Below are positions 2,421-58,076 of a stretch of 64,000 bases of DNA, one piece after another; within the stretch, counting starts at the first letter, position 1, and each line of letters opens with the position of its first letter. The stretch lies in contig NC_086106.1 in assembly GCF_963921235.1 (NCBI RefSeq), forward strand, positions 25,730,001 through 25,794,000, given 5' to 3'. A model generated the notes under the pieces. That model was given only the letters and a program-made list of their open reading frames with translations. It ran no database searches and had not been told where the DNA came from. The DNA is from Mobula hypostoma (taxonomy: Eukaryota). A program made the position numbers and the translations under genes.

Positions 2421-3422
2421 GTCGATTGTGATGTGATTCAAAGTTCTAAAAGCAGCAATAGATTATGTCCTTTGCAAGAGTATTGAACGGTAGGATGAAA
2501 TTGAATCTCAATCCCATCCACCTCGGTATGACCTTGCTGTTTAATTCCTGTCTGCGCTGCATTTTTATACGGCTCTCAGAATTTATTTTTGCATTCTTTT
2601 ATTGTTTAACTTTGTGCTACCTCCATAAAAAATGCAGTGAATTCATCTGTAAAAACCGAATCAATCCAGTCATGTGACAATAATAAACAAATTCCTATCC
2701 AATTTACATATGTAGCGAACTTCACGTGGCTATAACATTAGTTCGGTTAAATCTGGTCGGGAAACCAGATTATACAAGCAATCACCCTGTTGTGATCTCA
2801 TTCCCTCTCTCCCCCCTCGCTCTCTTTTATACTAAAAATACCTTCTAAATATGAATCTCTGGGTAGTATGCGATCACGTATATGTAGTTTAATCATAAAT
2901 TCACTTTAAATATTGAACCTCTTTCTCAGAGCAAGGACCAAAATAGCATCTGCATTCTTAAACACGCGAAGCATCCGCTGGTTGTATCGCATTATCTAAA
3001 TTCTCAAAATAAACAATAAGTAATTGTTCCAACATCCTGAATTTCATCAGCGTGCTACTTGCAATTCTTCAACAATCAGAAAACTGCCAATATTCACACA
3101 ATCTGGTTTCCTTTAGTCAGCCATTGTGTTATTTAACTATATCCGGGATGCATTCTGATCTGATTAATTTACACTGCAGACACTCAACAAAGTGGCACAA
3201 GACAATATCAGACAAGGGTCTCAACGGTGATATGCCGTTGCAGCAACAGAGCGCGGCTGAATGCAGATTCCGATATCCAGGAAAGTTGTACAGTTCCAGT
3301 TTGGGTCCCCGTTGTAATCAGCCCCTTCGAGTTTCATCGCCAAACGACACCCTCCAGTGAAAGCTTTTCGCATTAAACAGGACAGTTTTTGTTTGGACCC
3401 ACCGTGGCCTTACAACAGTGTG

Positions 3423-3852
3423 GTGCTCACTGCACAGACGTACATGCCGGAGTCCGACACATGAGCTTCACTGATATTCAATTGAGCCGTCTTACTGCCT
3501 TTCTGCAAACTAGCGGTAAACCTCACTGCAATCTGGATGCCGCCCCATTCCTCCTATACTATGCAACTTCAGCAAATAATGTGGACGTTTGCAGCTATGT
3601 TGAATATAACAAAAGATATTCGCACTTAGCGTAAGTGTAATTACAGTTAAGTGTTATTTTCTTTCCTTCCTCGGCCGTCAAGTCAGGAGGATCCTACGTC
3701 ACTGAATCTTTCCCACTCGCTCCTGCAGTAAAGAGCAGAATACATAGACATCGCTGGCTTGTATTGAACGCCGGGGAAATTCGTTGGCCAGTTCGCAGAG
3801 ACTCACCAGGCAGCACAGCCAATCCAATCAGTAATAAACAGATGAAAATCAT
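3423..3852 (-). pseudogene. TCR V pseudogene (family of the 25.6/46-kb genes), RSS retained at 3384-3422
   Basis: Leader MIFICLLLIGLAVLP; TAG at the FR1 Gln (3694-3696); frameshifts; ends DSGMYVCAVS; RSS CACACTG-23-ACAAAAACT. Confidence 0.9.
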
Positions 3853-4048
3853 GGCGTCTAATTTCTGCCGCAATCGAGCGGCAGGTTGCTTACAGGTCGT
3901 AATTATCACCTAATAGATACTGTGGTGTGAGAACGTTTCATCAATAGCTTCCACCTATTGTTAGATTTGGGGAGTTTACCTGGTTAAAGGATGGGCTGAC
4001 GGAATGAACCGAGCCTTTCTGAGCACCTGTTTCTTCGTTCTTTCAACG

Positions 4049-4207
4049 NNNNNNNNNNNNNNNNNNNNNNNNNNNNNNNNNNNNNNNNNNNNNNNNNNNN
4101 NNNNNNNNNNNNNNNNNNNNNNNNNNNNNNNNNNNNNNNNNNNNNNNNNNNNNNNNNNNNNNNNNNNNNNNNNNNNNNNNNNNNNNNNNNNNNNNNNNNN
4201 NNNNNNN
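4049..4207. other. Assembly gap (N)
   Basis: N run; a second gap at 48485-48638. Confidence 1.
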
Positions 4208-5694
4208 CTCAGTCTCTTTCCCAGCGTACCCTACTTCCTCGGTTTACCAGTTCTCTGCATGTTCACTACACAGACTTATCAATGTCTAATCCAACACATG
4301 GCTTTTCACGTTGTCGCTTCTTCAACATGAGCAATATCTCGCTGCATGTAGTTGATGCATTTATTTATTTGTTTTGTTTGTTAGTTATTTGAAGACCCGT
4401 AACACAATATGTATCAGTCTTCCAGCATTAAACTAGCTTTTCAACTGTTTGTAAGATTTATTCTCTACGCTTTGTATGCTGTTAGGGAGGCATCTCCGAT
4501 CCACGTCAATAGACCCCTGACAGCACACTCTGTGTAGCCAACACATTCTTCGTTAAAAAAAAAAACTCACCTCTGTGTAGCCAACACATTCTTCATTAAA
4601 AAAAAACTCACCTCTGGCATTCCCTTGTAATTTCTATCAGTCGTCTTAAAATATCGTCCTCTTGCATAAGCCATTTCCACTCTTAGGTCAAGGTGTGAGT
4701 TCTCCACTTTATCTATGTCTCCTATCATATCTTACACAGCTATTAAGCTACCCCTCAGCTTCTAAAATTTCAAAAATAAAAGTGTTTGCTCGTAGAAACT
4801 GAATTGTCCGTTGGAATATAAATACGCTTGCGAATGTGTAACTGTAGTTTAGCATTACGACTTGTTCTATCTTAATCGTCGATGCATAGGGATAAATCTC
4901 TCCCCCACGAGGCACCCACTATTTGTGCAAAGATTCGCCGGGCAGCTTAGTCAATATGTATCAAGGAAGCACATGGTGTCTCATTTCTAAAAGCCAGATT
5001 ACATCAAATGAGGTAATACCACAGATCTGTGAGAATAGAGTCAGATACGCTGCACCTTTCACTTCGTTTGAAATCTGCGTACATTGCTCTGCTAAATGGG
5101 AGCTGAACCGTGGAAGTCAGAACTAAGTCTATTTAGCCACCGATCTGAATGGAACTACTACGTTCACTGTCTCTTAAACATTCTCTCTAATTTTATTCTA
5201 TTTCTCGCTCTCACTCCCTCCCTCCTTCGTTGCACTTTTACTGACTCTTCATTTCCAGCAATGCCTCTCCTTCTCTATTCTCTCTTTCCATGCTCTCCTG
5301 TATTTCCGTCCCTGTCTCTCAATCGATCTCTGTCAGCCACTGTAATCTGAAGTAGTCGATTTTTGTTGACCCCCCACACCCCCACCGTCCACCACTCTCT
5401 CCACAAGATGTTGTTAACCACAAGATAGTGTGATAGGCAACAGAGAGACACATGGAAACCGAGATAAAGTAGAGATGTTTCGGAAAGCTGCCAAAATATC
5501 TTTAGGTAACCCGGAATTCAAGAAGTGTTCCTCAAAGTTGTGCGCATTTTGGCGCTGAATGCAGCGCTTTAAGTTGATCACGTGATCCTCATACTTCGTG
5601 CGTCCCGCTGTACCAGTTTCCCAGCAAAGGCGCCCACTAGTGATCACGCAAGCCTGGATTTTGTCCGGACCCTGTGTGCCCCTGTTAATCCTGA

Positions 5695-7209
5695 AGGGTC
5701 CATTGCACAGTGGTATACGACAGAGTCTGGCACAAGAACTTCACAGATATTTAAAGAGCTGCCTCTGCCTTTGTGCAAATCAGCTTTCAACCTTGCCAAA
5801 CATTCTGGAGGCCGCTCCTGTTATGGTCCGGTCCGCAAAGTCCGCATTCCGTTTCACGGACCGGTCCATCGATCCTTATTACAGGTTTTCCGGATTTCCC
5901 CTCTTCTTTTGGTGCCTTAATTGAGGCATATGATTCTCATTTTGGGCAGGAGACATGAACAGATCCTGGTTCAGCTTCACTTGCTGGACTGTTCCTTTCC
6001 GATCCCCTTCGTTCTGTAGCCCTTGGCTGAAGCCTCACCTGCTACCTTTCGCCTGAAGCCTCGCCTGAGTCTTCGCCTAATCTCGCCGTCAAGTTCTACC
6101 GCCGGAGCAAGACGGGAGCCTTACTGTGTTTAGATAAGGAACTGTCTTTCGTTGTTTGGAACTGGCTCTGTCTCCACACCTTCTGTCGGTAAGTCCGGCC
6201 GTTTGTCGCTAGCTTGTGTAGGCAACCGTCTCGTCGAGTTCAGCATTCTGTGTATGAGTCCCTGCCCTACATCCTGTTCCCAAGGAGGGTCCGGTGTCTG
6301 TGTTCCATGTTCCTGTACTCCCTCGACCAAGTCTCTCTGTTCCTGTCTCCCTCGACCAAGGCTCCGCGTTCCTGTTCTCCCTCGACGAAGGCTCGGCATA
6401 CTTTTTTTTCCTTCGAACAGGGCTCGGCGTTCCTGTTCTCCCTTGACCAAGGCTCTGCTTTCCTGTTCTCCATCTTCCAAAGCTCTGCGTTTCACTTTTC
6501 CCTCGTCCAAAGCTCTGCGTTCCTGTTTTCCTTTGTCCAAAGCTTCGAGGTTCCAGTATCTGCCAAGACAAATTTCCTGTGTTCCAGTTCTGCCAAGATC
6601 AAATCCAGGCTTCAGGTTCTTGTCCAGTCCTGAAGCCACGTACAGTCCTCTGGCTACGCCACTTCCTGTAGCCACGTCTTGTCCGAGCCTGGATTCGGAG
6701 TCTGAGCCAGAGTCAAGACCCTAGTTCCGGGTCCCTGTCCAGTCTCTGGCTTGAAGTCCTACCCAGGCACAAGTTCCTACTTCCTTTTCTTGGCTCCGCT
6801 TCGCTAGTCAAGTCCAGCCCAGGTCTTGGATCCTAGTCTCGTTCAGAGTCTGTGCCTTGCATTTAGGTCCGCTTCCAGCGCCCCCCGCCCCTATGACAGC
6901 TTCAGATTTGCTGAGCCATATACCTTCAGCAGTAATTTTTCCAGATTTGCCACGATACGGAATGTATCAAAAATGTTTGCATTACTTCGTGTGCAATTGC
7001 AATTCAGTGTGATGATCTGCCTTTTGTCAGCCATTAATTTAGGAGCATCCTAGATCACTGAATCTTTCTCTCTCGTTCATGCATTAAAAGACAGAATGCA
7101 GTAATATCCGTGACTTGCACTGAACTCATGTTTCACTCCTTGGTCATTTGCACAGCGTCTTACCTGTCAGGATGGCAAATGTAAACAATAACAAACGGAA
7201 GGAACACAT
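5695..7209 (-). pseudogene. TCR V pseudogene (family B) split by a solo LTR
   Basis: Leader 7209-7164; acceptor AG mutated; TAG at 7050-7052; FR2 lesion; ends DSVVYHCAMD; heptamer lacks CAC. Confidence 0.85.
5819..6898 (+). mobile_element. Solo-LTR-like element inserted in a V exon
   Basis: TGTTA..TGACA termini; 5-bp TSD GCTCC/GCTTC; internal ~30-bp tandem repeats at 6320-6540. Confidence 0.75.
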
Positions 7210-8197: not shown

Positions 8198-8330
8198 CAT
8201 GCTGCACGGCAGAAAGATACAAGGAAGAGCCCGAAGCAAGATCCTCGGTGATTTTTCATTGAACCATCTTCCATCATTTTGCAAAACAGTGGTAAACAGC
8301 GAAACATCAATTAATTACTAGTGGGGTGAG
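8198..8330 (-). pseudogene. 3' remnant of a V exon
   Basis: ITEDLASGSSLYLSAVQ followed by heptamer-like CACAGTT (8197-8191); paralog at 50.35 kb. Confidence 0.55.
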
Positions 8331-15726: not shown

Positions 15727-17658
15727 CGACCAACACAGGGAAACATGTTGTCTGCATTAAATCAATAATAGGATTTTATGAAATTGTTACGGGAGAGAAG
15801 GTGATAGATGGAGTTCAGGGGCAGAAGAGACTCAGTGGACCTAGAAAGCGTGTCTCTCGCACCTCATTCGTCACTTACTCAAGGCGTAGGATTATGGAAT
15901 TAATCAGAACAATTACCTGTTCACAGAATCTCTCAGTTTCCCACTCATGATCTCTCCCGGCGATCTTCTTCCTGTAGCCTGAATTCTTTCCACACAGACC
16001 CTCCTTGCTTTGTTTCTCTTCAGTAATTAACTTCTCAACTGTGTGTCACTCTTTTATCCTTTCTCCTTCCGCTTCTCCTTTCCTTTCTCAGTTTTGTTCT
16101 CCCTCTCTTTTACCCAATTTGCTTTTGCTTTCTCTATTCTGCACCCTCTGACACCCACTCACATGCACGCACACTCCCCTCTGTCTCTCTCTCTACCTCT
16201 CTCTCACTCTCTCTCTCTCTCTCTCTCACTCACACACACACACACACACACACACACTCTCTTTCTCTATCGCTCGTTTGCTCTGTGCCACATGCAATAA
16301 CACATTTTGTATAATAAAGATTATACGATGTTGAAATTCGGAAAGGAGTTTGTTCACTTGTTTTACTGTTCCGTGAGGCGCCTGGAGACAATGCAGCGAT
16401 TAATATCATGTAGACCAATTCTGGGATATGTGCAGACAACCGAAGGTTGGATGCTGATGTTAGAGAATGAAGATGATACCTGGAATGGCGAAATTGCCTG
16501 TTCTTTCTCCTCTTGCTTATGATTGTTACGCTGTAACTCATCCTGGTTACTTTGGTTGACTGTTCAGAAATTTGATTGGCTCAGTTCATTTTCTCAGTAA
16601 ACAGAGCAGAAAGCATTGTGACGATAGTCAAGGGCAAAAACGAGAACAACTTTCTTCTGTGGTTCCGGATTTAAAAGGAAAATGGACTCCCTCTCCACGA
16701 GGCACATTCACGGAAGCTTCATTCGGAGTGCAGTGGCTCTCCTGTCAGCAGATGGTTCTGCAGGTTCCGTGTTTATAGGGCTGAAGATGCAGTCTGCCAA
16801 AAATAAAAACGTATCGATTGAACGGTTTTCATCTGTGTTGCAGAGAGAAGGATAAGCATTATTGGACATATAAGGTTTTGATCTGGCTTACACAGTGGAC
16901 CGAGGACACTTCTCCTGGCAAAAGCAGCCGGGATATTGAGACTTCGATAGAATTGAGAGACATTGCTTTCAGAATGTGGGCTGAATATGGTGGAATCAGA
17001 CCAGAAAAGGTAGGCAACCTGCGACCAGATAGGGAACGGCTATCGGGAAGCTGGGCGGAGCGGGGTCCAAATAAGTTATCAAGAGGGGATCGGAGTAGGA
17101 GTGGTAGGACAATAATTCTCAGGGGGCGGGTGCAGCGGATAGGACAGGAGGAATTTTCTGAGGGGTTTCACTTTGATCAGAAGGAGAGAAAGGGAACGGG
17201 ATTCCCAGAACATTTGAACATTCATAAATAAAACTTAATAACGTCGTTTTGCAGATACCCCATGGGAAAATACGGTGCAGTTCCTTCAGTTTGCATTTTG
17301 CCTCATCCTGCTGTTGGTGGAAGCCGGCAATGTCCAACTCTCCCTTTATATCAAAACGCCATCCTCTTCTGTGCATCTTTCGGTCCTCCTCCCCTTCCAG
17401 TTCGAAACTGTAAGCAAATAAAGAAAAGCAATAAGCAACGTCTTTTCTGAGCATAGGAGTCGGGTGTTCAATCTCTTGTCGCCTAACGGTGTTGTCTTCA
17501 TAGGGCTCTGTCCTGGGAAGGTTTGAAGGTGCCTGAGTCTCGTGGCTGAGCTCACTTTGATGTGGAGGTTAGGCTGAGGTCACCCTCTGGTATGAGAGCT
17601 CACTGCAGTCAGGATATATATTTTTTGTCCAGATCTGCCTGCATCCCCAAAATCTGTG

Positions 17659-17938: not shown

Positions 17939-18039
17939 CTTTAACAAACCCAAAGTTTCTGAGGGGCGCCGGGTCAATATGGGTTGAGTCAAGAAACTGC
18001 AAGTTTTAAGGAACCCTGCAGGCAGCTATATACAAGCCT

Positions 18040-19585: not shown

Positions 19586-19770
19586 CGTCACTCCCGCAAG
19601 CAAAGCAGCATTCCAACTAACTGAAAAATGTAGTCGGTAATTTCTCCCCTTTCCCATGGAGTTTAGCCTTCTTAAGTTAATCACGTAACAGTGGTGGCTA
19701 TGTGTTTGCACCCCGGCTGTTTCCCGGCAAAGGGCTCCCTCTAGCGAGCGCTCACTGCATCACGGAGTTC

Positions 19771-19809
19771 GGATTTTGTCCAGAGCCGGCATCGCCTTGC
19801 AACACTGTG
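19771..19809 (-). other. 23-RSS
   Basis: Heptamer CACAGTG (19809-19803), 23-bp spacer, nonamer ACAAAATCC. Confidence 0.95.
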
Positions 19810-20233
19810 GGCATCATGGCACAAAGATAAACGGCGGAATCCGACACAAGAGCACCAGAGATGTTCAAATGGGCTGCCTTGCTGTCACGCTGCCAACCAG
19901 CGGTAAACCTCGCTGGATTCCGGTCCATTATCCCAGTGCTATATACCGTCAGCAAATATCTTGGAGATTCCACCCGATGCTGAATGTACCAAAAAATATA
20001 TGTAGGATCGCCAGTGTAATTACAGTTCATTGTTACACTTTGTTCTTCCGCAATCGTTAATTCAAGAGGCCATTGCGTCACCGAATCCTTCCCATTTGTT
20101 CCTGCAATAAAAGGACAGAATGCATGAACAGATCGGGCTTTCTTCGTACATACAGAACAGATATAGGCCGTTACCGCGGAGACTCACCGGGTATCGTAGT
20201 CAATATAATCAGCAGATAAAACTGATAATTCAT
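19810..20233 (-). CDS. TRAV: Intact TCR alpha/delta-type V segment (leader exon 20233-20188, V exon 20101-19810)
   Basis: Leader MNYQFYLLIILTTIP, GT-AG intron, open V exon GTNGKDSVTQWPLELTIAEEQSVTMNCNYT..FWYIQH..LNISGALVSDSAVYLCAMM with Cys23, Trp41 and Cys104. Alpha versus delta cannot be separated from the V alone. Confidence 0.9.
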
Positions 20234-24067: not shown

Positions 24068-25546
24068 CCCTGTCTTTCAAAATGAACAAGCTTTAGCAGT
24101 CTTTCAATTCTTCTTCTCGGACCTCATCGCGCGTCGTCTTCCTGCTGTATCGGGACCAGAATATGTCTCGTTCCCTTCTTTATCTCCCTTAATCACTCTT
24201 TTCACCTGTTTCCTCTCCTTTCCGCGCATTCTCTGCACTCCGCTCTTTCCGTTTCTCTTTTTTTTGTCCTCCACTTTGCGTCTCTAACTGTCGTTCACTC
24301 ACTTTCCCTTCCCCTTTCTCCCTCTCTCTCTCTCACTCTCTCTTTCTCTCTCTCACTCTCTCTCTCTCTGTCTCTGTCTCTCTCTCTTTCTCCTCTCATT
24401 CTGTAGCTCTCTCTTCTATCTATCTCCTACCTCTTATGCACGGATTCCATGTGGATGCTCCTAATAGGCAATCATTTATCCCTCGCATAGGTGTATTCCT
24501 TCTTGTCCAAAACTGTTCTTGGGGTTCTGGGTGTGTTGTAGCTCTTATCGCCCTGCCACTTCGTCCTCTTGTAGCCTCTGAGCAGGGAGGTTGTGTTGTC
24601 TCAGGACGGGGCGTTGTACGATGTTCAGCAGGATGCGCTCCGTTCCATGTGCCCATTCTACGCAGGATCTGTTCTGTCCAGATCGGCAATCACACTGCAT
24701 TAGGGAATGCTGATCATGCAAATATACATAGTGGAACCCTGCACAAGACCACTGGATATATTTGAATCCAAGCAGTGGCCATTTCATGTCCAAACAACCT
24801 GAAATCTTCACCGGTGTAGTTTGCTACTGATTTTCACTCTCATAAGTCAACCACGTGATTCTTGCTAATATTTGGGTGCGCCACTTCGAGTTTTCTATCA
24901 CGACCCGCCCTCTAGCGACGGTTCACTGCATCACACCTCGCACACACAGTATGTACTTTCAACATAAATTCACTATGAACAATGACCATTTCTCACAGTC
25001 CGTTAATGCAACGACCAAAATACTGTTTGCATTCTCTATCACGCTAAGCATCCGCAGGACCTGTCGCATTATCTAAATACTCAGTCTAAATCATAAGGAG
25101 CTACTGCAACATCCTTAATTTCAGCAGCATGACACTTGCTATTCTTTGTCAAACTAAAACAACGATTTGCTCACGCTCTGTTTTCCCTCAGTGAACCACT
25201 GTCCTATTTAAATATATTGCAGTTCCACTCCGGCCTTATTGCTTCTCTATGCAGAAGCTCGAACAATGTAGCCAAATACGACGTCATACTAGGTTGCCAA
25301 TCGCGATATGCCGTTGCAGCACAGAGGGTGGGTGAATGCACATTGCCGTATCCCGGAAATACATTATAAAGATCCAGTTCGGGTGCGCATTGTAGTCATG
25401 AACTGTTCCATTACCTTCGGCGCCTTGTGTTGGTGATTGCAGCGCTGTTAAGTAGGGCACGTGACCACTGCTGATTTCAGTGTGCGCACTCCCAATTTAC
25501 CGGCAAAAGACCCCTCCAGTGAGAGCTTTTTGCATTGTACAGAACC

Positions 25547-25585
25547 AGTTTTTGTCCGGACCCGCCGTCTTCAGGCAACAGCGTG
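25547..25585 (-). other. 23-RSS
   Basis: Heptamer CACGCTG, 23-bp spacer, nonamer ACAAAAACT. Confidence 0.9.
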
Positions 25586-26017
25586 ATGCTCATTGCACAG
25601 AGATAGAAGCCAGAGTCCGTCACAAGAGCTTTAGTGATATTCAGTTGAGCAGTCTTGCTGCCTTTCTGCAAACTAGCGGTAAATGTAACTGGACAATCTG
25701 GATGCCGCTCCATTTTTCCTGTGCTATATACCTTCAGCAAATACTCTGGAGATCCTCCACTATGTTGAATGTACCAAAAGGTATCTTCATCAGCGTCAGT
25801 GTAATTACAAATCATTGTTATGGTCTGCTCTTCCTTAGCCGTTACGTCGGGAGGATCCTGCGACACTGAATCTATCCCAGACGATTCTGCAAGAAAGGAC
25901 AGAATACATTAACATCGCTAGCTTGTATTGAACACCAGAGAAATTCGCGGGCCACTTTAGCAGAGACTCACCAGGCAGCAAAGCCAAAGAAATCAGCAAT
26001 AAACAGAGTAAAATCAT
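25586..26017 (-). CDS. TRAV: Intact TCR alpha/delta-type V segment (leader 26017-25972, V exon 25886-25586)
   Basis: Leader MILLCLLLISLALLP, GT-AG intron, open frame DSVSQDPPDVTAKEEQTITMICNYT..FWYIQH..MERHPDCPVTF..DSGFYLCAMS. Confidence 0.9.
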
Positions 26018-29406: not shown

Positions 29407-29518
29407 CGCCCTGATGAAATGGACCTCGAGACCCTCATTGATTTGTGTTCATCTCTTAAAGCGCCCCCTCCACCCATGGCCTGTTTTTAGGGTTCTTGCA
29501 TCTCCCAGCGACAATATG

Positions 29519-35475: not shown

Positions 35476-36494
35476 CTAATTAGTGTTGACAAAAGGAGAA
35501 ATAGAGACACATGACTTGAAATATTCAGCTCGTCTAAAAAGGTCTGAGGGGAGAGGACGTTCAGGCTTTACATCAGCAGGTTCTCCTGTAAAGGGCACCA
35601 GCGCGAAAAAAGTAATCTCATAGATATTATATTTATCAGGATGGCCATTGCTGATCCAGGGTGAGAAGGTTAACGTGATTACGGTCCTCCTTAGATCAAT
35701 TATTCGTAAAAGTCAACGTGGAAGAGCACAGCCTTTCCAAATCAGCCTGAAGTATACTATATCTGTTTTGAACAGAAGAGAGCAGTGAGGTTACGATCCA
35801 CACAGAGATCTTCCAATGCACATGAAGCCACAGTCAGCGCCGTGGACGTAAGTTCCATCATCAGCAGAGTGAACCCGTGGAAAGTACCTGGACTGGGTGG
35901 TGTCTAAGCCACTGTGGTTAGTTGCCGCACAACTCAGTTCGCGGGGCTACATGCAGAACATTTTCTCCTCGTCCCACTTCAATATCAGTCTCCCACCTGG
36001 CTTAGAAGATCACTATTAAGTTTGCTCCTCAGGAAAAACATAAAGTAAGTCTTATTGACCACCGGCCAGTGACTCTGAATCTCTGAATCCATCATCATTA
36101 CGTGATAATGGCACAGATTAACTCCAGCTATCCAGCCAAACTCGACCCACTACTGTTCACTACTGCCAAAGCAATTCAACAGTGGACGCCAGCTTCCTAG
36201 TCTTACATGCATCTACAGGTGGGCGTTAAGCGAACCCACATTCGCTAGACAGCTGTTATCGGCTGTGCTATGTAAAGTCCCAGTTTGGGTGCGCGTTGTA
36301 ATCAGGAACAGTTCCTTTAGCTGCGGCGCCCTGTGCTGCTGATTGCAGCGCTCTGAAGTAAGGCAGGAAACCATGGCTGATTTCCGGGTGCGCCCTTCCC
36401 ACTTTCTGGGCAAAAAGAGGTCCTCCACTGAGAGCATTTTTCATTATTCAGGACTTGTTTCTTGTCCGGATCTCCATCTGCATTCAACTTTATG

Positions 36495-36928: not shown

Positions 36929-38180
36929 GCTGTCTAATTTCTTGCTGCATCGACCGGCAGCCTCCTTCCAGGTCGTAAGTATCACTTAGCAGTTACGGTT
37001 GTGTGGATCGTTGAAGCGGTACCGTTTTTTATGTGTAAAACCGGGGACATTTCCCTGGTTGAGGAATTCGCTAACACTAAGAACCGAGCCTTTCTGAGCG
37101 CCATCAGAATCCGTTTTGTTTCCATTCGTCATTCTGGGTTTTTCTCCGCTCATTCAAGGTCCCGCGTCCACACCCCCCTCCCCACCCCCGCCCTATCCCG
37201 TCTCTCTGTCTCTGTTTCTCTCTGTCTCACACACTCTCTTTCTCGGTGTGCCCAACTGCCTCCGCCCCGTTCTCTGCAAAATCACAGCATATTCACATAG
37301 TTATCGATGTGTAATCCAAATCAGTTATGAATTTCCACGTGGTCACTTCGTCGTCTTCGTCAATATTACGCTGGAAGTATTTATTTAGCCATTTGTTTAT
37401 TTAGTTAGTTATTTGGAGGTATATCCCATAATTGTCTCTTAGATCAACATTTATCAGTCTTCCGGCATTGAACTAGTTATTCAATATTGGCAAGTGTTCA
37501 TCTGGTTGTTCCCTAATCTTTGTCCGCTCTTAGGGTGCCAATCTCCTATCCATGCCAATAGACTCCTGATAGCATCCTTTAAGCAGCCACCCCTCCTTTC
37601 GTTAAAAAAAAAAATCTCACATCTGGCAGCCACCTTGTAGTTTCTTCCCATCGTCTTAAAATATCGTCCTCTCGCCTGACTCATTTCCACCCTCAGGCCA
37701 AATCGCTGGTTGTCCACGCTATCTTTGAGGAAGCTAATGTTAATAGACGCCACCTAAAATGTATCTTCATCTAAGCATGTAGTGTTACAGCTAATAGGAT
37801 GCTGTCTGGTCATATACACCCTCAGTGTCTTCAGGTTGCAATCATCTTCACTGCTAATCCCTCAAGGTGGTGGAAAATGATGTCAGCAAAAAAAAAAAAT
37901 AGCCACAAGATATTGGTAGAGGCAAGAAAGGGAGACATGGTCACCGAGATGTAGTGGAAATGTTCCAGAAAACTGCCACGATATCTCTAGGTAAAGCTAA
38001 ATTTAAGAAGTGTTCCACAAAGTTGGGCGCATTTTGCTGCTGAAAACCGTGTTTTAAGTTGACCACGTGATCCTCATGCTCTGCGCGTGCAGCTGTTCCA
38101 GTTTCCCAGCAAAAGTCCCCCTCTAGTGATCACACAAGGCTGGATGTTGCCCGTAACCGCTGTCGCACTGCAACACTGAG

Positions 38181-42890: not shown

Positions 42891-42894
42891 GTAC

Positions 42895-43420
42895 CAGTTC
42901 TACACAGATGCCAGAATTCAACATAACAGCTTGAAAGCTATGCAATTGAGCCGTCAGCTGCCCATATGCAAACTAGTGATAAATCTCACTAGGCAATCTG
43001 GATGCCGCTCCATTACTGCTGTGCTATAATTTGCTTCAGCAAATTATTCGGAGTTTCTCCACAATGTTGATTGTACGAAAATCTATCTGCATCAGCCTAA
43101 CTGTAATCACATTTGAGTGCTATGGACTATCCTCTCTCAGCCGTTCAGTCGGAAGGATCCGGCGTCACTGAATGTTTCCCATTCGTTTCAGCAATAAAGG
43201 ACACAATGCATCAACATAGCTGGCTTGTATTAAACGCCGGGGAAATTCACTGGCCATCTTCTCAGGCTCCCGAGGAAACACAGCCAATGAAATCAGCCTA
43301 AAACAGAGATTAGATTAGATTAGAGTAGATTAGATCAGATTAGATTCAATTTTATTGTCATTGTGCCGAGAACAGATACAAAGCCAATGAAATGCATTTA
43401 TTAAGAGAGGAAAAGCATGG
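42895..43420 (-). pseudogene. TCR V pseudogene (family A); 3' end lost next to a Rex1-like fragment, leader interrupted
   Basis: NGKHSVTPDP..YSTAVMERHPDCLVRF; stops; no RSS; (TCTAA)n-tailed insert at ~43290-43400. Confidence 0.75.
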
Positions 43421-45914
43421 TGTCTAATGTCTGTCCAGATCGAACGGCAGATTTATTCCAGGACGTAATTACCACTCAACAGATATTGTGGTGTGAGATC
43501 GTTTCAGCACTACCTTCACTTTGTGAAAGGCCGGGGGCGTTTCCTTGGTTAAGGATTCACTGACAGGAAGAACCGAAACCTTTCCGAGCACCGAGCGAGA
43601 AGAAACAGCTTCGCTTCCATTCGTCATTCTGCTCGTTTCTGCGTTCGTTCAAGGGCGCACGCACCCTCCCCACCCCCATCTATCTCTCTCTCTCTCTCGA
43701 TGCCAATGGGAGAGATGGAGAGATTACTGCCGATTCCCAGTTGGGCATATCGGTATAAAAAGAATGCTTCATACTGACTGTAACATCGAAATAGTGACTG
43801 CCGACTCGTCTCTCAGATTTGAAAGAGCCATATCAGTCTTTCATTTGTTAGTGAGAGAGAGAGAGAGACAGAGAATGCCTGTAAAACGATGAAATATTAC
43901 AATAAGCAGCTAGCTTTTGTTGTACTGTAGACCAAGCCGCTCTTTGTGTTTGTGGTTGTTTCGATGGTGATTGGTGGTGGAAATGCTGATGCTTTATGCT
44001 AGAATAAGTGAGAGAGGCAGAAGCTGGTCAGGTTAATGCTGCTTGTCGCTGATTGTGCGAGGGATGTGACAGGGGACTTTTAGATTCTTATCTTTTTTTC
44101 TGATATTGATGCATTTTGTTTTTGTTCTGTTTTAAGGATGTCTGTGGAGACTATAAATTTCAGGTTGTGTATTTTGCACCTCTTAGATTTTAAGCGGAGC
44201 CATTGAATCAAGCTGGGCATTCGGTTCGCTGTACCCTGGAACATCTGACAACAGCAAATATATAATATACATACTCAGGTTTCATGTAACTGTGAGCGTT
44301 TGCAGAGTGAAGGAATATAGCAGGCTGTCCATCATTAGTTCATAGAACATGGGTTGGGCAGGAAAGTGGCGGGGTTGGTGGCTGCAGAGCGCCTATCATG
44401 ACACCCTGGCGATATCTGGTGTCATGTCCCAGGGATTCGGTTCGATTCCGAACTTCGGATGCTGTCAGCGGATACTTACATGCTCAGCTTCCACAATTCC
44501 TGAGTTGCTATGTTTTTCACTGCCCGAAAAAGACGCTGTGGGTAGCACGTGTTCGTGTTCGGAGGATCAGTGAATGTACATATTAAGAGGAATTTGCGAA
44601 ATTGGACAGATAAATCAGTTGACAATAAGACCATAAGATACAGGAACCAAAGTAGGCCATTTGGCTTGTCGAGTCACCTCCGTCATTTCAGATGAGAAGG
44701 TGTCATGATGGAATTATTTGATACACTAAACATATAATTAAAACGAGACATTCAAAAAGTCGAATTATACCTTTGGAAACAGATGCTATCAGTTTGTGCT
44801 CCTTCGACAGTAACCGGACGTTCTCACTGTTTGTCTCTTCCATCGGTGGAAAAAGACAAAGTTTTCAAAGCAAGTTCCCATGAAACAACAATAGACTATT
44901 CCCACTTGCAAGAGTATTAAACTGCAGGATGAAATTGAATATTAATCTTGGTATGACCTACCTCTTTATTTCCTGCCTGTGCTGCATTTTGATACGTCTG
45001 TTACAGTTTAGTTTTGTATCCTTTTATTGTTTTACTTTGTACTGTCTCGATAAGCTGTGCAGTGAATTCATCTGAATAAGCAGAATCAATGCAATAATGC
45101 CACACTAATTAAAAACAATGTTTTCAATTTAGGTATGTAGGAAAATGCTACACGTGGTGATAACATCGGTTCCGTTAAATCTGGTTGGGAAACAAGATTA
45201 AACAAGCAATGAATCTGTCGTGATCCCATTCCCTCTCTCTTCCTTCGCTCACTTTTATACTGAAAATGCCTGCAGACTATGAATCTCGGGTTAGTCTGCG
45301 GTCACGTATATGTACTTCAATCATAAATTTAATTCAAATATTGAACCTTTTCTCATAGCTTGGGAATGCAACGACCAAAGTAGTATCTGCCTTCTCTAAC
45401 ACGCTAAGCATAGGCAGGTTCTGCCGAATTATCTAAATACTCAGTATAAATCATAAGTAGCTGCTGCAACATCCTTAATTTCAGTAGCATGTCACTTGCA
45501 ATTATTTGTCAATTGGAAAAAAGTCCAATTTTCACACCCTCTGTTTTCCTTTAGTCCGCCATTGTGCCATTTAAATATATCCCGGTTCCACTCCGTCCTC
45601 ATTATTTCACACTGCAGGTACTTGAACAAAGTGGCCAAAGCCGATGTCAAACGAGGCTGTGAAGAGTGATATGCCGTTGCAGCAAAAGATGGTGGGTGAT
45701 TGCACATTCAGGCACTGTATCCGAGAAAGTTATGAAGCTCAGTTTGTGTCCGCGTTGTAATCAGGAACTGCTCCTTCAGGTTCGGCGCCTTCTGCTGCTG
45801 AATGCAGTGGTCTGAAGTAGGGCACGTGACTGTGACTGATTTCCGGGCGCGCCCTCTGCAGATTCCTCGGAAAAAGGCGCCCTCCAGTGAGAGCTTTTTG
45901 CAATATACAGAACC

Positions 45915-45953
45915 AGTTTTTGCACAGACCCGCCGTCCCCATATAACAGTGTG
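45915..45953 (-). other. 23-RSS
   Basis: Heptamer CACACTG, 23-bp spacer, nonamer GCAAAAACT. Confidence 0.9.
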
Positions 45954-46376
45954 GTACCCATTGCACAGAGATATATGGCAGAGTCCGACACAAGAGCTTC
46001 ACGGATATTCAAATGAGACGTCTTGCTGCCTTTCTCTGAAGTACCGGTAATCCTCTCTGAATACTGCTGCGTTCCTCCTGTGCTATATAACTTCAGCAAA
46101 TAATTTGGAGCTCCTCCACTATGTTGAATGTACCAAAAGATATCTGCATAAGCATCGGTGTAATTACAGTTCAGTGTTATGTTCTGTCCTTCCTCAATCG
46201 TTCTATCGGGAGGATCCTGCGTCACTGTATCCTTCCCACTCGTTCCTGCAAGAAAGGACAGAATACATCAACAACGCTGGCTTGTATAGAATGCCGGGAA
46301 AACTCGCTAGCCAGCTTCGCTGAGACTCACCAGGGAGCACAGCCAATGCAATCAGCAATGAACAGAGGGAAATCAT
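45954..46376 (-). CDS. TRAV: Intact TCR alpha/delta-type V segment (leader 46376-46331, V exon 46245-45954)
   Basis: Leader MISLCSLLIALAVLP, GT-AG intron, open frame KDTVTQDPPDRTIEEGQNITLNCNYT..FWYIQH..DSAIYLCAMG. Confidence 0.9.
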
Positions 46377-46627: not shown

Positions 46628-46628
46628 A

Positions 46629-46702
<74 letters not shown>

Positions 46703-46708
46703 CTCTCT
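46628..46708. repeat. (CT)n microsatellite upstream of a V gene
   Basis: Direct read; similar (CT)n(CA)n tracts at ~16180-16260 and ~26265-26337. Confidence 0.9.
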
Positions 46709-48199: not shown

Positions 48200-49168
48200 T
48201 CCGTAAATCGTTCTGCTAAATGGAAGCTGAACTGGGGAAGTCAAAACTGAGCCTATTTGGCCAGTGATCTGAATGAAACTAGGACACTGTCTGTTTCTTA
48301 ATAATTTGCTCTAATTCTAATGTAGTTGTCGATCTCACACATCCGTCCTTCTTTATACTTAAAATGGCACTTCATTTCTAGCAATGGATCTCTGTCCTTG
48401 TCCGTCTTTGGTGACTCCCTTAAATTTTCGTCGCCGTGGCACGCTGTGGCTGTCTCTGTAGTCCATTCTAGCCCTTTATTTGTCNNNNNNNNNNNNNNNN
48501 NNNNNNNNNNNNNNNNNNNNNNNNNNNNNNNNNNNNNNNNNNNNNNNNNNNNNNNNNNNNNNNNNNNNNNNNNNNNNNNNNNNNNNNNNNNNNNNNNNNN
48601 NNNNNNNNNNNNNNNNNNNNNNNNNNNNNNNNNNNNNNTGGGGAAATTCGTTTACAAGCTGCCAGTTCACTCGGTATTCCGGTATTCACTGTCAATATGA
48701 AAAAAAATCAATTGTTCTCCACTTTTAAGAAGCTAATGTTAATAGAGTCCACCTGAAATTTATCTTCATCAGAAGGATTTACATGACAGCTTAGCCGAAG
48801 CTGTCTAGTCACATGCACCTCAGTATCTCCAGGTTGCACTCATCTTCACTGTAAATCGTGCAAACCCGTCAAAAATTATTTCCAGACAATTGTTAACCAC
48901 ACAATATTGTCATAGGCAACAGACACACAGTATTGTTATGGACACTGAGATGTAATGAAAAGTGTTTCGGAAAAATGCCACAGTAATATGAGGTAGAGCT
49001 GAACTCAAGAAGTCTTCCTCAATGTTTGGCGCTTTTTGCTGCTGAATGCAGCATTTTAAGTCGACAGGGTGATCCTTATGCTTTGTGCGTGCGGCTGTTC
49101 CAGACTCCCAGCTAAAGCGCCCTCTACTGTTCACGAGTCCTGACCCATAGTGTCCCTGCAATTCTGTA

Positions 49169-49597
49169 GGGTGCATTGCACCGAGGTATACACCAGAGTT
49201 TGGGACAAGAACGCCAGCTATGTATAAATGAGATGACTCTGCCTCTGTGTACATCAGCTGAAAATCTCGCCGAACAGTCTGGAGGTTTCTCCAGTGCTCC
49301 TGAGCCATATACCTACAGCATTTATTTTTTGAGATATTCCGCCATGCTGAGTGCATCAAAAATATTTGCATTAGTTCTTGTTAATTGAAGTTTAGTGTTA
49401 AGAGCTGACTTTCGTCAGCCGTTAATTTGGTAGCATGCTAGATCACTGAAACTTTCTCTCTCGTCCCTGCATTAAAGGACAAAATGCACTAAGATCCCTG
49501 ACTTGCACTGAACTCACGTGGCACTGTCTGGTCATATGTGCAGCGTCTTGTCTTTCAGAATGACGAAAATATTGAATACGAAACAAAGAAAGCACAT
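49169..49597 (-). pseudogene. TCR V pseudogene (family B)
   Basis: TAG at 49438-49440; donor mutated; ends NSGVYLGAMH; RSS partly deleted. Confidence 0.8.
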
Positions 49598-50349: not shown

Positions 50350-50470
50350 CGTGCTGCAAAGCAGAAAGATACAATGAAGAGTCCGACGCAAGAGCTTCGG
50401 TGATGTATCATTGAACCATCTTCGATCATTTCGCAAAGCAATGGTAAACAGCAAAATATCAATTAACGAC
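50350..50470 (-). pseudogene. 3' remnant of a V exon (paralog of 8.2 kb)
   Basis: ITEALASDSSLYLSALQ followed by CACCGTT. Confidence 0.6.
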
Positions 50471-54210: not shown

Positions 54211-54329
54211 CTCTAACAAATCCAAAGTTTGTGAGAGGCGCCGGATCCTTCTGGGTTGAAATAAGGAAACTGAAAGGGTTCAGGAACCCTGCTGGCAGCT
54301 ATATACAAGCCTGCCGACAGTATGTGGAA

Positions 54330-55845: not shown

Positions 55846-56036
55846 TGCCACAGTCAGTCCCGCAAGCAAAGCAGATGTCCAACTAACTGAAAAATGTAGT
55901 CAGTACTTAATCCCCTTTCCCCTGGAGTTCCGCCTTCTTAAGTCAATCACGTGACAGTGATGAATATGTGTTTGCGCCCCGGATGCTTTCCGGCAAAGGG
56001 CTCCCTCTGCCGAGCGCTCACTGCATCACGAAGGTC

Positions 56037-56075
56037 GGATTTTGTCTGGAGTCGTCATCGCCTTGCAACACTGTG
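56037..56075 (-). other. 23-RSS
   Basis: Heptamer CACAGTG, 23-bp spacer, nonamer ACAAAATCC. Confidence 0.95.
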
Positions 56076-56508
56076 GGCATCATGGCGCAAAGATAAACGG
56101 CGGAGTCTGACACAAGACCAGCAGAGATGTTCAAATGGGCTACCTGTCTGCCACGCTGCCAACCAGCGGTAAACCTCACTGGACATTCTAGATGCCGTTC
56201 CATCGTGCCTGTGCTATATACCTTCAGCAGATATCTTGGAGATTCCACGCGATGCTGAACGTACCAAACAATAGAGTCAGGATTGCCAGTGTAATTACAG
56301 TACAGTGTTACAAATTGATCTTCGACAATAGTTAATTCAAGAGGCCATTGCGTCACGGAATCTTTCCCATTTGCTCCTGCAATAAAAGGACAAAATGCAT
56401 GAACAGATTGGGCTTTCTTCGGACATACGGAACAGATATAGCGCGAAACCGCGGAGACTCACCGGACATCATATTCAGTATAATCAGCAGATAACAAAGA
56501 TAATTCAT
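56076..56508 (-). CDS. TRAV: Intact TCR alpha/delta-type V segment (leader 56508-56463, V exon 56376-56076); paralog of the 19.8-kb V
   Basis: Leader MNYLCYLLIILNMMS, GT-AG intron, open frame DSVTQWPLELTIVEDQFVTLYCNYT..VWYVQH..MERHLECPVRF..DSAVYLCAMM. Confidence 0.9.
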
Positions 56509-56639
56509 TGTGTCTGGCTTCAAACTCAATTGAAAGAGAGCTTACTTTCAACAAGTTGATATCCTTGACCGATATTGAAGAGCAAAATCCGATTAGCAGC
56601 ATATTTCGGCAGACGTAAATCTAGGGGCGTTACGTTGCC

Positions 56640-56720
56640 TGCCAATGGATTGATTGGCTGTGAGAACCGATCAGAGTCGGTCCGTGCACCAATCACAGAT
56701 CGGTTTGTTTCAGTTCCTCT
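56640..56720 (-). promoter_or_regulatory. Candidate V promoter: ETS-IRF composite plus CCAAT boxes
   Basis: AGAGGAACTGAAA at 56720-56708 and CCAAT/ATTGG motifs. Confidence 0.55.
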
Positions 56721-58061
56721 ATATGGTTTTATAAATCCGACGCTCGGAGCCTTAAATAGCGCCGCGCTAACCTCTGTGCGAGAGTGGTTATACTTCACTT
56801 TATCTCTTGCATTCTTCTTCCAGTCAGGATCCCTTTCCTATTTCTCTCTCCTCCCGATGTTTATCGCTCTACTCTCTGTTCTATTGATCACCATCTCTTG
56901 TTCTTTCACTTCTTCATTTCTCTTACGTCTCTCCGAGTTATCCACTTTGTCATTCCATCATACCAAACCGCCCACCTTCTCCTCCCATTTTACTCACCAT
57001 ATCAACCGCCCACCGTTTTCCCTAGATATCACTTCCTCTGCTCACTCGTAAACCGAAACTCACATTGAGACGTATTTATCGTCACATTTCTCCCTGCGGG
57101 AAAACGGCGAAACGCCACTGAGGCAGACAATAAGGAAAAAACTTGTTCACTCGGGGGAACGGGGGTTATGCTTTCGCTTGAGTCTGTGGACGGACGAGAG
57201 TTTGGTGAACAATTTGCAGATGCTGAAAATCCTATGCCATTCCCAAAACTCTTGAGGAAGTCAGCAGGTCAGGCGGAATCTGGGGAAAATATAAATACTG
57301 GATTTGTCGGTCTCACCTCTTCGTCCTTCGTTATAGTTTCAATGATACTTCATTTCTAGCAATGAATCTTCTTTGTTCCCTCTTTCGGTTCTCTCCAATA
57401 TTTCTGTTGCTGTTTCACTCAATAGCTCTCTGCCTACCTCTGTATTCTAATCCAGTCCATTTTGTCTACCCCATACCCCGCTATCCATCTCTCTCTCTCT
57501 CTCTCTTCACTTCGCACTCCCCACAGCTTGCATACGCAGCCACAACAATTCAATCAGATTTTTATTTTTCTAAATCATCATTATAGATTTTAACTAGCAG
57601 TGGAAACAACCTTTAACCCATTGCCAGTTCACTTGGTATTCATTTTGAATCTGAAAAAAATACCATCCATTGCTCACCACTTTTAGAAAGCAAATGTCAA
57701 TACAGTCTAATTGAAATTTATCTTCATCAGAAGCATATAGCGTGTCAGCTAATCCGATGCTATCTAGTCACATATACCCTCAGAATCTCCAGTTTAAGCT
57801 CATCTTCACTGTTAACATTTCAAGGTAGTGAAAAAATTATATCCAGCCAAACGTCGTTGACCACAAGATATCGCTGCAGGCAACAGAAAGAGACATGAAC
57901 ACCGAGATATAGTGAAAATGTTTGGCAAAGCTGCGAAAATATTCCGAATATTCCGAAGTGTTCCTCAATGTTGGGAGCATTTTGCTACTGAATGCGGTAT
58001 TTTAAATCGACCAAATAATCCTCGTGCTTTGTGCGTACGGCTGTAGCAGATTCCCAGCAAA

Positions 58062-58076
58062 GGCGCCCTCTAGTGA
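58062..58076 (-). promoter_or_regulatory. RSS-adjacent CTCF-like motif (best example of a recurring element)
   Basis: TCACTAGAGGGCGCC, 12 bp 3' of the nonamer; variants beside most RSSs. Confidence 0.6.

What the first reader, a model, noticed from the sequence alone, without database searches (positions are those of the whole stretch)
3346..58076. CTCF-like motif just 3' of the RSS across divergent V families
Seen: a 15-mer on the V sense strand lies about 12-24 bp past the nonamer. Copies: TCACTGGAGGGTGTC (3346-3360), TCACTAGTGGGCGCC (5629-5643), TCGCTAGAGGGAGCC (19733-19747), TCACTGGAGGGGTCT (25508-25522), GGTGGAGGGGGCGCT (29460-29474, closer to a degenerate nonamer), TCACTAGAGGGGGAC (38115-38129), TCACTGGAGGGCGCC (45876-45890), ACAGTAGAGGGCGCT (49116-49130), TCGGCAGAGGGAGCC (55999-56013), TCACTAGAGGGCGCC (58062-58076). 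All share one orientation, and the motif persists where the surrounding flank aligns poorly between families. Established: the CTCF core is CCA[CG][CT]AG[AG][GT]GGC[AG]. Mouse D-proximal IgH V segments use RSS-adjacent CTCF elements to gain access during cohesin/RAG scanning, while mouse Tcra/d sites are mostly at V promoters. Inference: an RSS-adjacent CTCF design operates in this fish TCR alpha/delta V array, suggesting the scanning logic is ancient or convergent.
Basis: partly seen in the sequence, partly recalled or inferred. Interest (0 to 1): 0.8.

Follow-up and report, generated by a model that had tools for sequence, protein, structure and literature searches.

The report
CTCF-type box behind TCR V signals
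In this skate or ray T-cell-receptor V-gene array, nearly every V segment has a conserved, same-direction CTCF-type motif just past its recombination signal, as in mouse antibody heavy-chain genes, but only a few copies are strong matches and binding is untested.

Summary
All ten 15-mers are at the stated coordinates, on the minus strand, which is the V sense strand. They lie 12 nt (family B) or 23-25 nt (families A and C) past the 23-RSS nonamer. I found an eleventh copy without a V (24904-24918) and three decayed copies.

Between V families the box is as conserved as the RSS: identity 0.61-0.69, against 0.37-0.41 for other post-nonamer stretches and 0.31 for the spacer. Its per-position conservation follows the CTCF matrix (rho 0.70).

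As CTCF sites the copies are uneven: two strong, five moderate, the rest below threshold. The strongest sit behind pseudogenes. The four intact V segments score 10.6, 10.5, 9.0 and -3.1.

The box is part of a ~95-nt module that also holds a TTTGCCGGGAAA box and a CACGTG E-box at fixed spacing.

Strong copies recur at 4 of 4 V segments in a skate assembly and one unnamed run. In bamboo shark, teleost-like and tetrapod loci only 2 of 48 V segments have one. This favours a lineage-restricted, convergent design over an ancient one.

Occupancy and any role in RAG scanning are untested. The scan reported the same feature on three neighbouring windows of this genome.

The parts
58062..58076 (-). CTCF-type core TCACTAGAGGGCGCC, 12 nt past the nonamer of family-B pseudogene V (exon end 58139)
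   Evidence: PWM 17.4 bits, p=7e-7. One mismatch to CCASYAGRKGGCR.
49116..49130 (-). CTCF-type core ACAGTAGAGGGCGCT behind family-B pseudogene V (exon end 49186); the nonamer is largely deleted
   Evidence: PWM 17.3 bits. One mismatch to the consensus. The gap at 48485-48638 lies 478 nt further downstream, outside the unit.
5629..5643 (-). CTCF-type core TCACTAGTGGGCGCC behind family-B pseudogene V (exon end 5707)
   Evidence: PWM 12.3 bits. T at the R position 11.
19733..19747 (-). CTCF-type core TCGCTAGAGGGAGCC, 23 nt past the nonamer of intact family-A V (exon 19821-20090; heptamer 19803-19809, nonamer 19771-19779)
   Evidence: PWM 10.5 bits. V exon open. RSS coordinates.
55999..56013 (-). 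CTCF-type core TCGGCAGAGGGAGCC, 23 nt past the nonamer of intact family-A V (exon 56087-56365; heptamer 56069-56075, nonamer 56037-56045)
   Evidence: PWM 10.6 bits. V exon open.
24904..24918 (-).
   Evidence: PWM 10.6 bits. Sequence context. Module homology to family A.
45876..45890 (-). CTCF-type core TCACTGGAGGGCGCC, 24 nt past the nonamer of intact family-C V (exon 45965-46234; heptamer 45947-45953, nonamer 45915-45923)
   Evidence: PWM 9.0 bits. G instead of the strongly preferred A at position 9.
38115..38129 (-). Weak copy TCACTAGAGGGGGAC behind family-B pseudogene V (exon end 38192)
   Evidence: PWM 7.6 bits, with C15 lost.
3346..3360 (-). Weak copy TCACTGGAGGGTGTC behind frameshifted family-C V (exon end 3434)
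   Evidence: PWM 4.9 bits; CG>TG at positions 15-16. The gap at 4049-4207 lies upstream of the V exon, outside the unit.
25508..25522 (-). Poor copy TCACTGGAGGGGTCT behind intact family-C V (exon 25597-25875; heptamer 25579-25585, nonamer 25547-25555)
   Evidence: PWM -3.1 bits. V exon open.
29460..29474 (-). Half-match GGTGGAGGGGGCGCT behind pseudogene V (exon end 29530); only the 3' half fits CTCF
   Evidence: PWM -0.8 bits.
17579..17593 (-). Decayed homologous copy ATACCAGAGGGTGAC behind pseudogene V (exon end 17670)
   Evidence: PWM 1.5 bits.
36417..36431 (-). Decayed homologous copy TCAGTGGAGGACCTC behind family-C V with stop codons (exon end 36506)
   Evidence: PWM -4.9 bits.
59405..59419 (-). 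Decayed homologous copy TCACTAGAAAGTACC behind pseudogene V (exon end 59498)
   Evidence: PWM 3.1 bits.
19720..19731 (-). TTTGCCGGGAAA box, one base past the core. Example from family A; homologous boxes follow the core in families B, C and D
   Evidence: Alignment A1. Between-family identity 0.60 for the 15 nt after the core among A, B and C. Coordinates checked.
55948..55953 (.). CACGTG E-box, 59-62 nt past the start of the core. Same place at 5579-5584, 24852-24857, 25458-25463, 38064-38069 and 45823-45828
   Evidence: Six of the window's 21 CACGTG lie at this fixed place.
45783..45801 (-). Second, further-downstream CTCF-type hit in family C (TCAGCAGCAGAAGGCGCCG); also 45847-45865 (10.4 bits) and 36324-36342 (8.2 bits)
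   Evidence: PWM 14.5 bits.

Best explanation
The window holds a one-orientation array of about 16 TCR alpha/delta-type V segments of a skate or ray. Four have open V exons; the rest are pseudogenes or fragments.

The V duplication unit carries, just past the 23-RSS, a module of about 95 nt. Its first and best-conserved element is a CTCF-type core, consensus TCACTAGAGGGCGCC on the V sense strand. A TTTGCCGGGAAA box follows it, and a CACGTG E-box lies about 60 nt further on.

Most likely mechanism (inferred): CTCF binds the well-matching copies. Its cohesin-blocking N-terminal side then faces the 3' side of the V segment, towards the J and C segments if the array is in the deletional orientation. 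Extruding cohesin would pause there and hold the adjacent RSS at a RAG-loaded recombination centre. This is how RSS-associated CTCF elements of mouse DH-proximal VH segments are thought to work.

Shown here: presence, position, orientation, conservation above the flank, a CTCF-like conservation profile, and recurrence in a second skate-type assembly.

Inferred, not shown: CTCF occupancy, cohesin stalling, and any effect on V usage.

Many copies in this window are decayed, some by CG>TG change at the core CpG, and are probably no longer sites.
For: - V identity: the best solved-structure matches of the V exon product are all TCR alpha V domains, and the V segments have 23-nt-spacer RSSs.
- Conservation between families: core 15-mer 0.61 (all families) or 0.69 (A, B, C), nonamer 0.57/0.62, heptamer 0.60/0.58. 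Other 15-column post-nonamer windows average 0.37 +/- 0.08 (maximum 0.52) or 0.41 +/- 0.13 (maximum 0.62). None of 144 windows reaches the core. The spacer is at 0.31.
- CTCF-like profile: over 17 copies, per-position information correlates with the CTCF matrix, Spearman 0.70, p=0.001. The core holds 1.16 bits per position against 0.59 in its flanks.
- Other genomes: a skate assembly (L003, GCA_028641065.1) has 3 of 3 V with hits of 16.8-17.3 bits. An unnamed run (L005) has 1 of 1 at 18.2 bits. The L005 core, TCAGCAGATGGCGCC, differs from the window consensus only at the degenerate S, Y and K positions, while its flanks have diverged.
- Boundary: blastn alignments between L003 and the window V units end at or within about 15 nt past the core.
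- Controls: 2 of 48 V in bamboo shark, teleost-like and tetrapod loci have such a hit, against 9 of 16 in the window plus L003 and L005. Fisher p=2e-5, but the V segments are not independent.
- Feasibility: skate TAD borders carry oriented MA0139.1 motifs (PMC10115646).
- Mouse parallel: VH cores lie 17-19 bp past the nonamer, are as conserved as the RSS, and are more conserved than the spacer (PMC6746451).
Against: - Only 2 of 11 copies are strong. No copy matches the IUPAC consensus exactly, and nearly all have T where CTCF prefers C at matrix position 4.
- The four intact V segments have 10.6, 10.5, 9.0 and -3.1 bits, while the best copies sit behind family-B pseudogenes. In mouse 7183 and Q52 families the pattern is the reverse (PMC6746451).
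- Within family B the core is no better conserved than the pseudogene body; the whole region is about 81% identical.
- Matrix position 15 (C) is poorly conserved.
- The V units are paralogues, so shared position and orientation follow from descent.
- The J/C side is not in the window, so convergent partner sites and deletional orientation are unknown.
Confidence: 0.5

Rival explanations
1. The box is only inherited flank. The V duplication unit extends about 200 nt past the RSS, and the likeness to CTCF is incidental. The box has no function, and its conservation reflects slow decay, gene conversion among V units, or alignment bias.
For: The whole post-RSS flank is homologous across families. 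Within family B the core evolves like the pseudogene body. Most copies are weak PWM matches. Consensus matches are not enriched window-wide. The strongest copies sit behind pseudogenes.
Against: Between families the core is as conserved as the RSS, while the spacer and most of the flank are near random identity. The conservation profile follows the CTCF matrix. Copies from other genomes keep a high score through changes confined to degenerate positions.
Confidence: 0.2
2. The module is a real regulatory element, but the box is read by another factor. It could be a V-linked accessibility element or a germline or antisense promoter, driven by the CACGTG E-box (USF, TFE or MYC-type bHLH-ZIP factors) and the TTTGCCGGGAAA box. 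A different zinc-finger protein would then bind the G-rich core.
For: The best-conserved stretch is shifted 3' of the CTCF core (TAGAGGGCGCCCTTTGC). The E-box lies at a fixed 59-62 nt in six modules. CTCF-critical positions 4, 6, 9 and 15 are often off-consensus.
Against: In L005 and L003a the core is kept at high CTCF score while the TTTGCC box and the E-box are lost. No other factor's matrix could be tested here.
Confidence: 0.2
3. The box is carried by a transposable element that spread CTCF-type sites, as SINE B2 did in rodents, and happens to lie near V segments.
For: Two plus-strand CTCF-like hits elsewhere in the window (28365, 63338) do lie in a repeat about 86% identical over 459 or more nt.
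Against: Nearly every window match to the post-RSS module lies behind a V segment or in the one orphan remnant next to V fragments; the single exception is a 64-nt match to its distal part at 30613-30676. There are no dispersed copies. Homology runs unbroken from the V exon through the RSS to the core. There are no Rfam matches.
Confidence: 0.03

Closest known systems
RSS-associated CTCF-binding elements of mouse and human DH-proximal IgH VH segments (Ciccone et al. 2019, PMC6746451; Loguercio et al. 2018, PMC5859386)
   Same: Both have a CTCF-type core at a short, family-fixed distance past the V nonamer, in one orientation relative to V transcription. The core reads 5'-CCA..GGGGC-3' on the V sense strand. 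It is as conserved as the RSS and much more than the intervening spacer. A CpG lies at the 3' end of the core in about half of the copies.
   Different: This is a TCR alpha/delta-type V array, not IgH, in a cartilaginous fish. The spacing is 12 or 23-25 nt instead of 17-19. In mouse, CTCF binding was shown by EMSA and ChIP; here it is untested. In mouse 7183 and Q52 families the functional members have the site and nonfunctional ones typically lack it; here the strongest copies are behind pseudogenes. Here the core is followed by a TTTGCCGGGAAA box and a fixed-distance CACGTG E-box.
CTCF sites of the mouse Tcra/Tcrd V region (Loguercio et al. 2018, PMC5859386, Table 2 and TCR alpha/delta section)
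   Same: Same type of locus. Most mouse sites (129 of 144) point toward J-C, the same logic as the co-orientation seen here.
   Different: Mouse sites are mostly upstream of V promoters or intergenic, not next to the RSS. I found no consistent promoter-side CTCF hit for the four intact V segments of this window.
Oriented CTCF motifs at little-skate TAD boundaries (Marletaz et al. 2023, PMC10115646)
   Same: The same matrix (MA0139.1, threshold 8) finds oriented motifs in a skate genome. This shows that the mammalian motif and the orientation code apply to this lineage.
   Different: Those are genome-wide domain borders measured in fin tissue. That paper's CTCF passages, which are all I read, do not mention antigen-receptor loci or RSS-adjacent sites.

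Membership tests
RSS-associated CTCF-binding element (mouse/human IgH VH type) | Sequence matches the CTCF core motif (CCASYAGRKGGCRS / MA0139.1) | tested here: inconclusive
   Of 11 copies, 2 score about 17 bits (p<1e-6), 5 score 9.0-12.3, and 4 score below 8. There are no exact consensus matches, and two copies have one mismatch.
RSS-associated CTCF-binding element (mouse/human IgH VH type) | Fixed short distance downstream of the V RSS nonamer | tested here: met
   23-25 nt in families A and C and in L003b and L005; 12 nt in family B; 26-31 nt in three other lineages. Mouse: 17-19 bp (PMC6746451).
RSS-associated CTCF-binding element (mouse/human IgH VH type) | One orientation relative to V transcription, with the core reading forward on the V sense strand | tested here: met
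   All copies are on the V sense strand. No reverse-orientation hit of 9 bits or more occurs in the same interval. This follows partly from paralogy.
RSS-associated CTCF-binding element (mouse/human IgH VH type) | Core as conserved as the RSS and more conserved than the RSS-to-core spacer | tested here: met
   Between-family identity: core 0.61-0.69, nonamer 0.57-0.62, heptamer 0.58-0.60, spacer 0.31-0.32.
RSS-associated CTCF-binding element (mouse/human IgH VH type) | CTCF occupancy in vitro and in vivo | not testable with these tools
   Needs EMSA, ChIP-seq or CUT&RUN on skate or ray thymus.
RSS-associated CTCF-binding element (mouse/human IgH VH type) | Association with functional, frequently used V segments | tested here: not met
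   Intact V segments score 10.6, 10.5, 9.0 and -3.1 bits. The top scores (17.4, 17.3, 12.3) belong to family-B pseudogenes. Usage data are not available.
RSS-associated CTCF-binding element (mouse/human IgH VH type) | Oppositely oriented partner sites on the D/J/C side of the locus | not testable with these tools
   I found only V-like segments in the window and did not search it for J or C exons; the rest of the locus was not available to me.
TCR alpha/delta-type V gene segment | V-set domain closest to TCR alpha V, followed by a 23-spacer RSS | tested here: met
   All of the top 60 solved-structure matches are TCR alpha V domains, best E=5e-16. Heptamer, 23 nt, nonamer. Alpha cannot be separated from delta use by sequence.

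The most novel reading that the evidence does not exclude
Skates and rays independently evolved the design known from mouse DH-proximal VH segments. An RSS-adjacent, J-ward CTCF element, here coupled to an E-box in a fixed-length module, would stall cohesin so that RAG scanning captures the V RSS, in a TCR alpha/delta locus. If so, loop-extrusion impediments beside the RSS are a recurrent solution in antigen-receptor evolution, not a peculiarity of mammalian IgH.
Probability: 0.3. Interest if true: 0.75.

Novelty: new member of a known kind. Interest (0 to 1): 0.5.

Why it matters
RSS-adjacent CTCF elements are a key part of the cohesin and RAG scanning model, which was worked out almost entirely in the mouse IgH locus. 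A conserved, co-oriented CTCF-type box at the same place in a cartilaginous-fish TCR V array would be a natural replicate in another locus and a lineage about 450 million years apart (the age is from my own knowledge).

It makes testable whether scanning impediments beside the RSS are a general, repeatedly evolved way to tune V usage. My searches of the open literature found no report of this for shark, skate or ray antigen-receptor loci.

Within this window the case is weaker than the title suggests. Most copies are decayed, and the functional V segments carry only moderate matches.

Tried and rejected
- A word-index protein search with a window V found nothing. The full HMM search was used instead.
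- Two of the closest V proteins (P0018, P0097; the latter from elephant shark) had no gene on record, so no holocephalan locus could be read.
- A test for selection within family B gave no signal: the core and the pseudogene body are equally conserved.
- The transposable-element origin was rejected, because module copies occur only behind V segments.
- A structured-RNA or known-RNA origin was rejected: no Rfam match at gathering score.
- The window-wide enrichment test with the IUPAC consensus was negative, so density alone is no argument.
- A ZNF143 (SBS)-like reading of TTCCCAGCAAAGG on the plus strand was considered from memory. It was dropped because only the first half fits and no matrix library was available.
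- A reading of the upstream TGCAGTGAGC, present in families A and E and the orphan copy, as the CTCF upstream motif was considered. It was not claimed, because the spacing did not fit my recollection and I could not verify it.
- The run accession of L005 was not found in any paper, so its species stays unknown.
- The species names of L001, L002 and L007-L009 are not given by the tools. I describe these loci by V-sequence type only.

Full report
**What is in the window**

They read as written on the minus strand. That is the V sense strand, because every V-like segment found by pattern search and tblastn lies on the minus strand.

I count about 16 V-like segments. Their exon 3' ends are near 3434, 5707, 15352, 17670, 19821, 24718, 25597, 29530, 36506, 38192, 42957 (truncated), 45965, 49186, 56087, 58139 and 59498.

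The product of the 19821 exon matches only TCR alpha V domains among the top 60 solved structures, best E=5e-16. The well-preserved segments have heptamer, 23 nt, nonamer signals.

Only four V exons are open: 19821 and 56087 (family A), and 25597 and 45965 (family C). All others carry stops or frameshifts. This includes the whole of family B (5707, 38192, 49186, 58139), which also lacks CAC heptamers.

**Assembly gaps**

The two gaps (4049-4207, 48485-48638) lie outside every V-RSS-box unit. No N occurs from 200 nt below to 300 nt above the Cys-codon coordinate of any V end. Nothing below depends on continuity across them, and I did not try to fill them.

**How CTCF-like the copies are**

I scored both strands with the MA0139.1 count matrix as I remember it, so the numbers carry that caveat. 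The maximum score is 27.7 bits.

| Copy (start) | V behind it | Score (bits) |
|---|---|---|
| 58062 | family-B pseudogene | 17.4 |
| 49116 | family-B pseudogene | 17.3 |
| 5629 | family-B pseudogene | 12.3 |
| 55999 | intact family A | 10.6 |
| 19733 | intact family A | 10.5 |
| 45876 | intact family C | 9.0 |
| 38115 | family-B pseudogene | 7.6 |
| 3346 | frameshifted family C | 4.9 |
| 29460 | pseudogene | -0.8 |
| 25508 | intact family C | -3.1 |

It lies in an orphan module with no V or RSS in front. Three further homologous but decayed copies follow pseudogenes, at 17579, 36417 and 59405.

As an independent check, I ran the IUPAC consensus CCASYAGRKGGCR at up to 2 mismatches. It gives 22 window matches against 16.3 +/- 4.1 in shuffles, so density is not enriched. 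Six of the 22 sit at the post-RSS place, and the only two one-mismatch matches are 49118 and 58064.

Six of 15 V flanks have a V-sense hit of 10 bits or more in the 70-nt post-RSS interval. Only 0.8% of random windows do, and no flank has one in reverse orientation. Because the V units are paralogues, this shows a shared feature, not independent events.

**Is the box conserved above the neighbouring flank?**

I aligned 13 V 3' ends (alignment A1) and computed between-family identity per column. Values are given for all family pairs and then for families A, B and C only.

| Region | All pairs | A, B, C only |
|---|---|---|
| Core 15-mer | 0.61 | 0.69 |
| Nonamer | 0.57 | 0.62 |
| Heptamer | 0.60 | 0.58 |
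| Last 21 coding nt | 0.67 | 0.66 |
| Nonamer-to-core spacer | 0.31 | 0.32 |
| Other post-nonamer 15-column windows, mean | 0.37 +/- 0.08 (maximum 0.52) | 0.41 +/- 0.13 (maximum 0.62) |

None of the 144 non-overlapping post-nonamer windows reaches the core. [quoted passage not shown] 17-19 bp between" (PMC6746451).

Over 17 copies in register (window, L003, L005), per-position information correlates with that of the CTCF matrix: Spearman 0.70, p=0.001. The core averages 1.16 bits and its 12-nt flanks 0.59.

The main misfit is matrix position 15. Several pseudogene-linked copies have lost its C, two of them by CG>TG. That is what methylated, unbound sites would do, but this is inference.

Within family B alone, the core is no better conserved than the pseudogene body; the whole region is about 81% identical. 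The constraint is therefore visible only over deeper comparisons.

**The flank is not unalignable**

The core opens a fixed-length module:

- The core is followed after 0-1 nt by TTTGCCGGGAAA or a close variant.
- About 30 nt of less conserved sequence follows.
- A CACGTG E-box lies 59-62 nt from the core start, in six modules.
- ACTTAA comes next.
- Family C has extra CTCF-type hits further downstream: 45847 (10.4), 45783 (14.5) and 36324 (8.2).

Apart from a 64-nt match to its distal part at 30613-30676, window matches to the module lie behind V segments or in the orphan remnant, so it is not a dispersed repeat. No Rfam family matches.

**Other genomes**

A profile of the four intact V exons found 1831 related proteins. 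I fetched DNA for ten loci.

| Locus | Source | V with RSS-adjacent V-sense hit of 8 bits or more |
|---|---|---|
| L003 | GCA_028641065.1 (little skate, from my memory of the accession; not confirmed by a tool) | 3 of 3 (17.3, 16.8, 17.3) |
| L005 | Logan run SRR17051963, species unknown | 1 of 1 (18.2) |
| L006, L010 | Bamboo shark; P0081 is named Chiloscyllium punctatum | 0 of 6 |
| L004 | Shark-like metagenome contig | 0 of 1 |
| L007-L009 | Three teleost-like loci | 2 of 23 |
| L001, L002 | Two tetrapod-type loci | 0 of 18 |

The L005 core is TCAGCAGATGGCGCC. It differs from the window consensus only at the degenerate S, Y and K positions, while its flank has lost the TTTGCC box and the E-box.

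Pooled, the window plus L003 and L005 give 9 of 16 against 2 of 48 in the other loci. Fisher p=2e-5, with the non-independence caveat.

blastn alignments between L003 and the window V units run through V and RSS and stop at or within about 15 nt past the core. In my sample the feature is therefore confined to skate- or ray-type V units. An earlier scan note reports it also in whale shark and some bony fishes. I could not test that; the single teleost-like hit in L007 (12.7 bits) is compatible with sporadic occurrence.

**Comparison with what is known**

- Mouse DH-proximal VH segments have CTCF cores (GACCAGCAGGGGGC) 17-19 bp past the nonamer. More than 98% are in one orientation, and binding was shown by EMSA and ChIP. 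In families 7183 and Q52 the functional members have the site and nonfunctional ones typically do not (PMC6746451).
- Bound CTCF in the mouse TCR alpha/delta V region is mostly upstream of V promoters, and 129 of 144 sites point to J-C (PMC5859386).
- Skate TAD borders carry oriented MA0139.1 motifs, and the skate genome encodes CTCF and cohesin (PMC10115646).
- A 2026 preprint argues that the barrier function of CTCF predates the vertebrate radiation (10.64898/2026.10.19.759930).
- My searches found no paper on RSS-adjacent CTCF motifs in shark, skate or ray antigen-receptor loci.

**Verdict**

A conserved, co-oriented, CTCF-type box is a real part of the V unit and resembles the mouse IgH design in place, sense and relative conservation.

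Three things hold it back. In this window only a minority of copies are good sites. The good ones do not track functional V segments. Binding and function are untested.

'Convergent' fits my taxon sample better than 'ancient'. Three neighbouring windows of this genome were already reported with the same feature (s1-141898, s1-141899, s1-142025). This window is therefore a further instance, not a first sighting.

Noticed in passing
window 24850-24932 (-): An orphan copy of the post-RSS module (core, spacer, CACGTG) with no recognisable V exon or RSS in front. V fragments lie just downstream, at 24718-24807. It may be the remnant of a deleted or decayed V unit.
   Followed up: partly
window 5707-5817 and 6900-7067 (-): The family-B V at 5707 appears split. 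Residues 56-93 of the V model match 5707-5817 and residues 1-56 match 6900-7067. About 1.08 kb is inserted between the two parts, possibly a mobile element.
   Followed up: no
window 5689-5695, 38174-38180, 58120-58126 (-) and family-B V exons: All four family-B V segments share stop codons, loss of the first conserved Cys, and heptamers that do not start with CAC. The family was therefore copied after it was inactivated. Even so, it holds the best CTCF-type matches in the window.
   Followed up: partly
window 5579, 24852, 25458, 38064, 45823, 55948: A CACGTG E-box lies at a fixed 59-62 nt past the start of the core in six modules. The window has 21 CACGTG against about 12 expected from base composition.
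   Followed up: partly
window 45783-45801, 45847-45865, 36324-36342 (-): Family C carries one or two extra CTCF-type hits (14.5, 10.4 and 8.2 bits) in the same orientation, 30-110 nt further downstream of the RSS-adjacent box.
   Followed up: partly
window 28365-28383 and 63338-63356 (+): Two plus-strand CTCF-like hits (11.1 and 14.5 bits) lie in copies of a repeat about 86% identical over at least 459 nt. They are unrelated to V segments.
   Followed up: partly
window 49515-49520 and 58474-58479: A second conserved CACGTG (TGAACTCACGTGGCAC) lies just upstream of the V exon in two family-B units, in the intron or leader region.
   Followed up: no
window 42957-43177 (-): A truncated V (residues 1-73 only) whose downstream sequence is unrelated to the usual FR3, RSS and module.
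   Followed up: no
L003 2060-2160 and 6580-6680: Two near-identical skate V units have the core 31 nt past the nonamer, with C at matrix position 4 (CCTCTAGAGGGCGCA). The flank after the core (TTTAGCGGCGGAAGCGG) differs from the window families.
   Followed up: no
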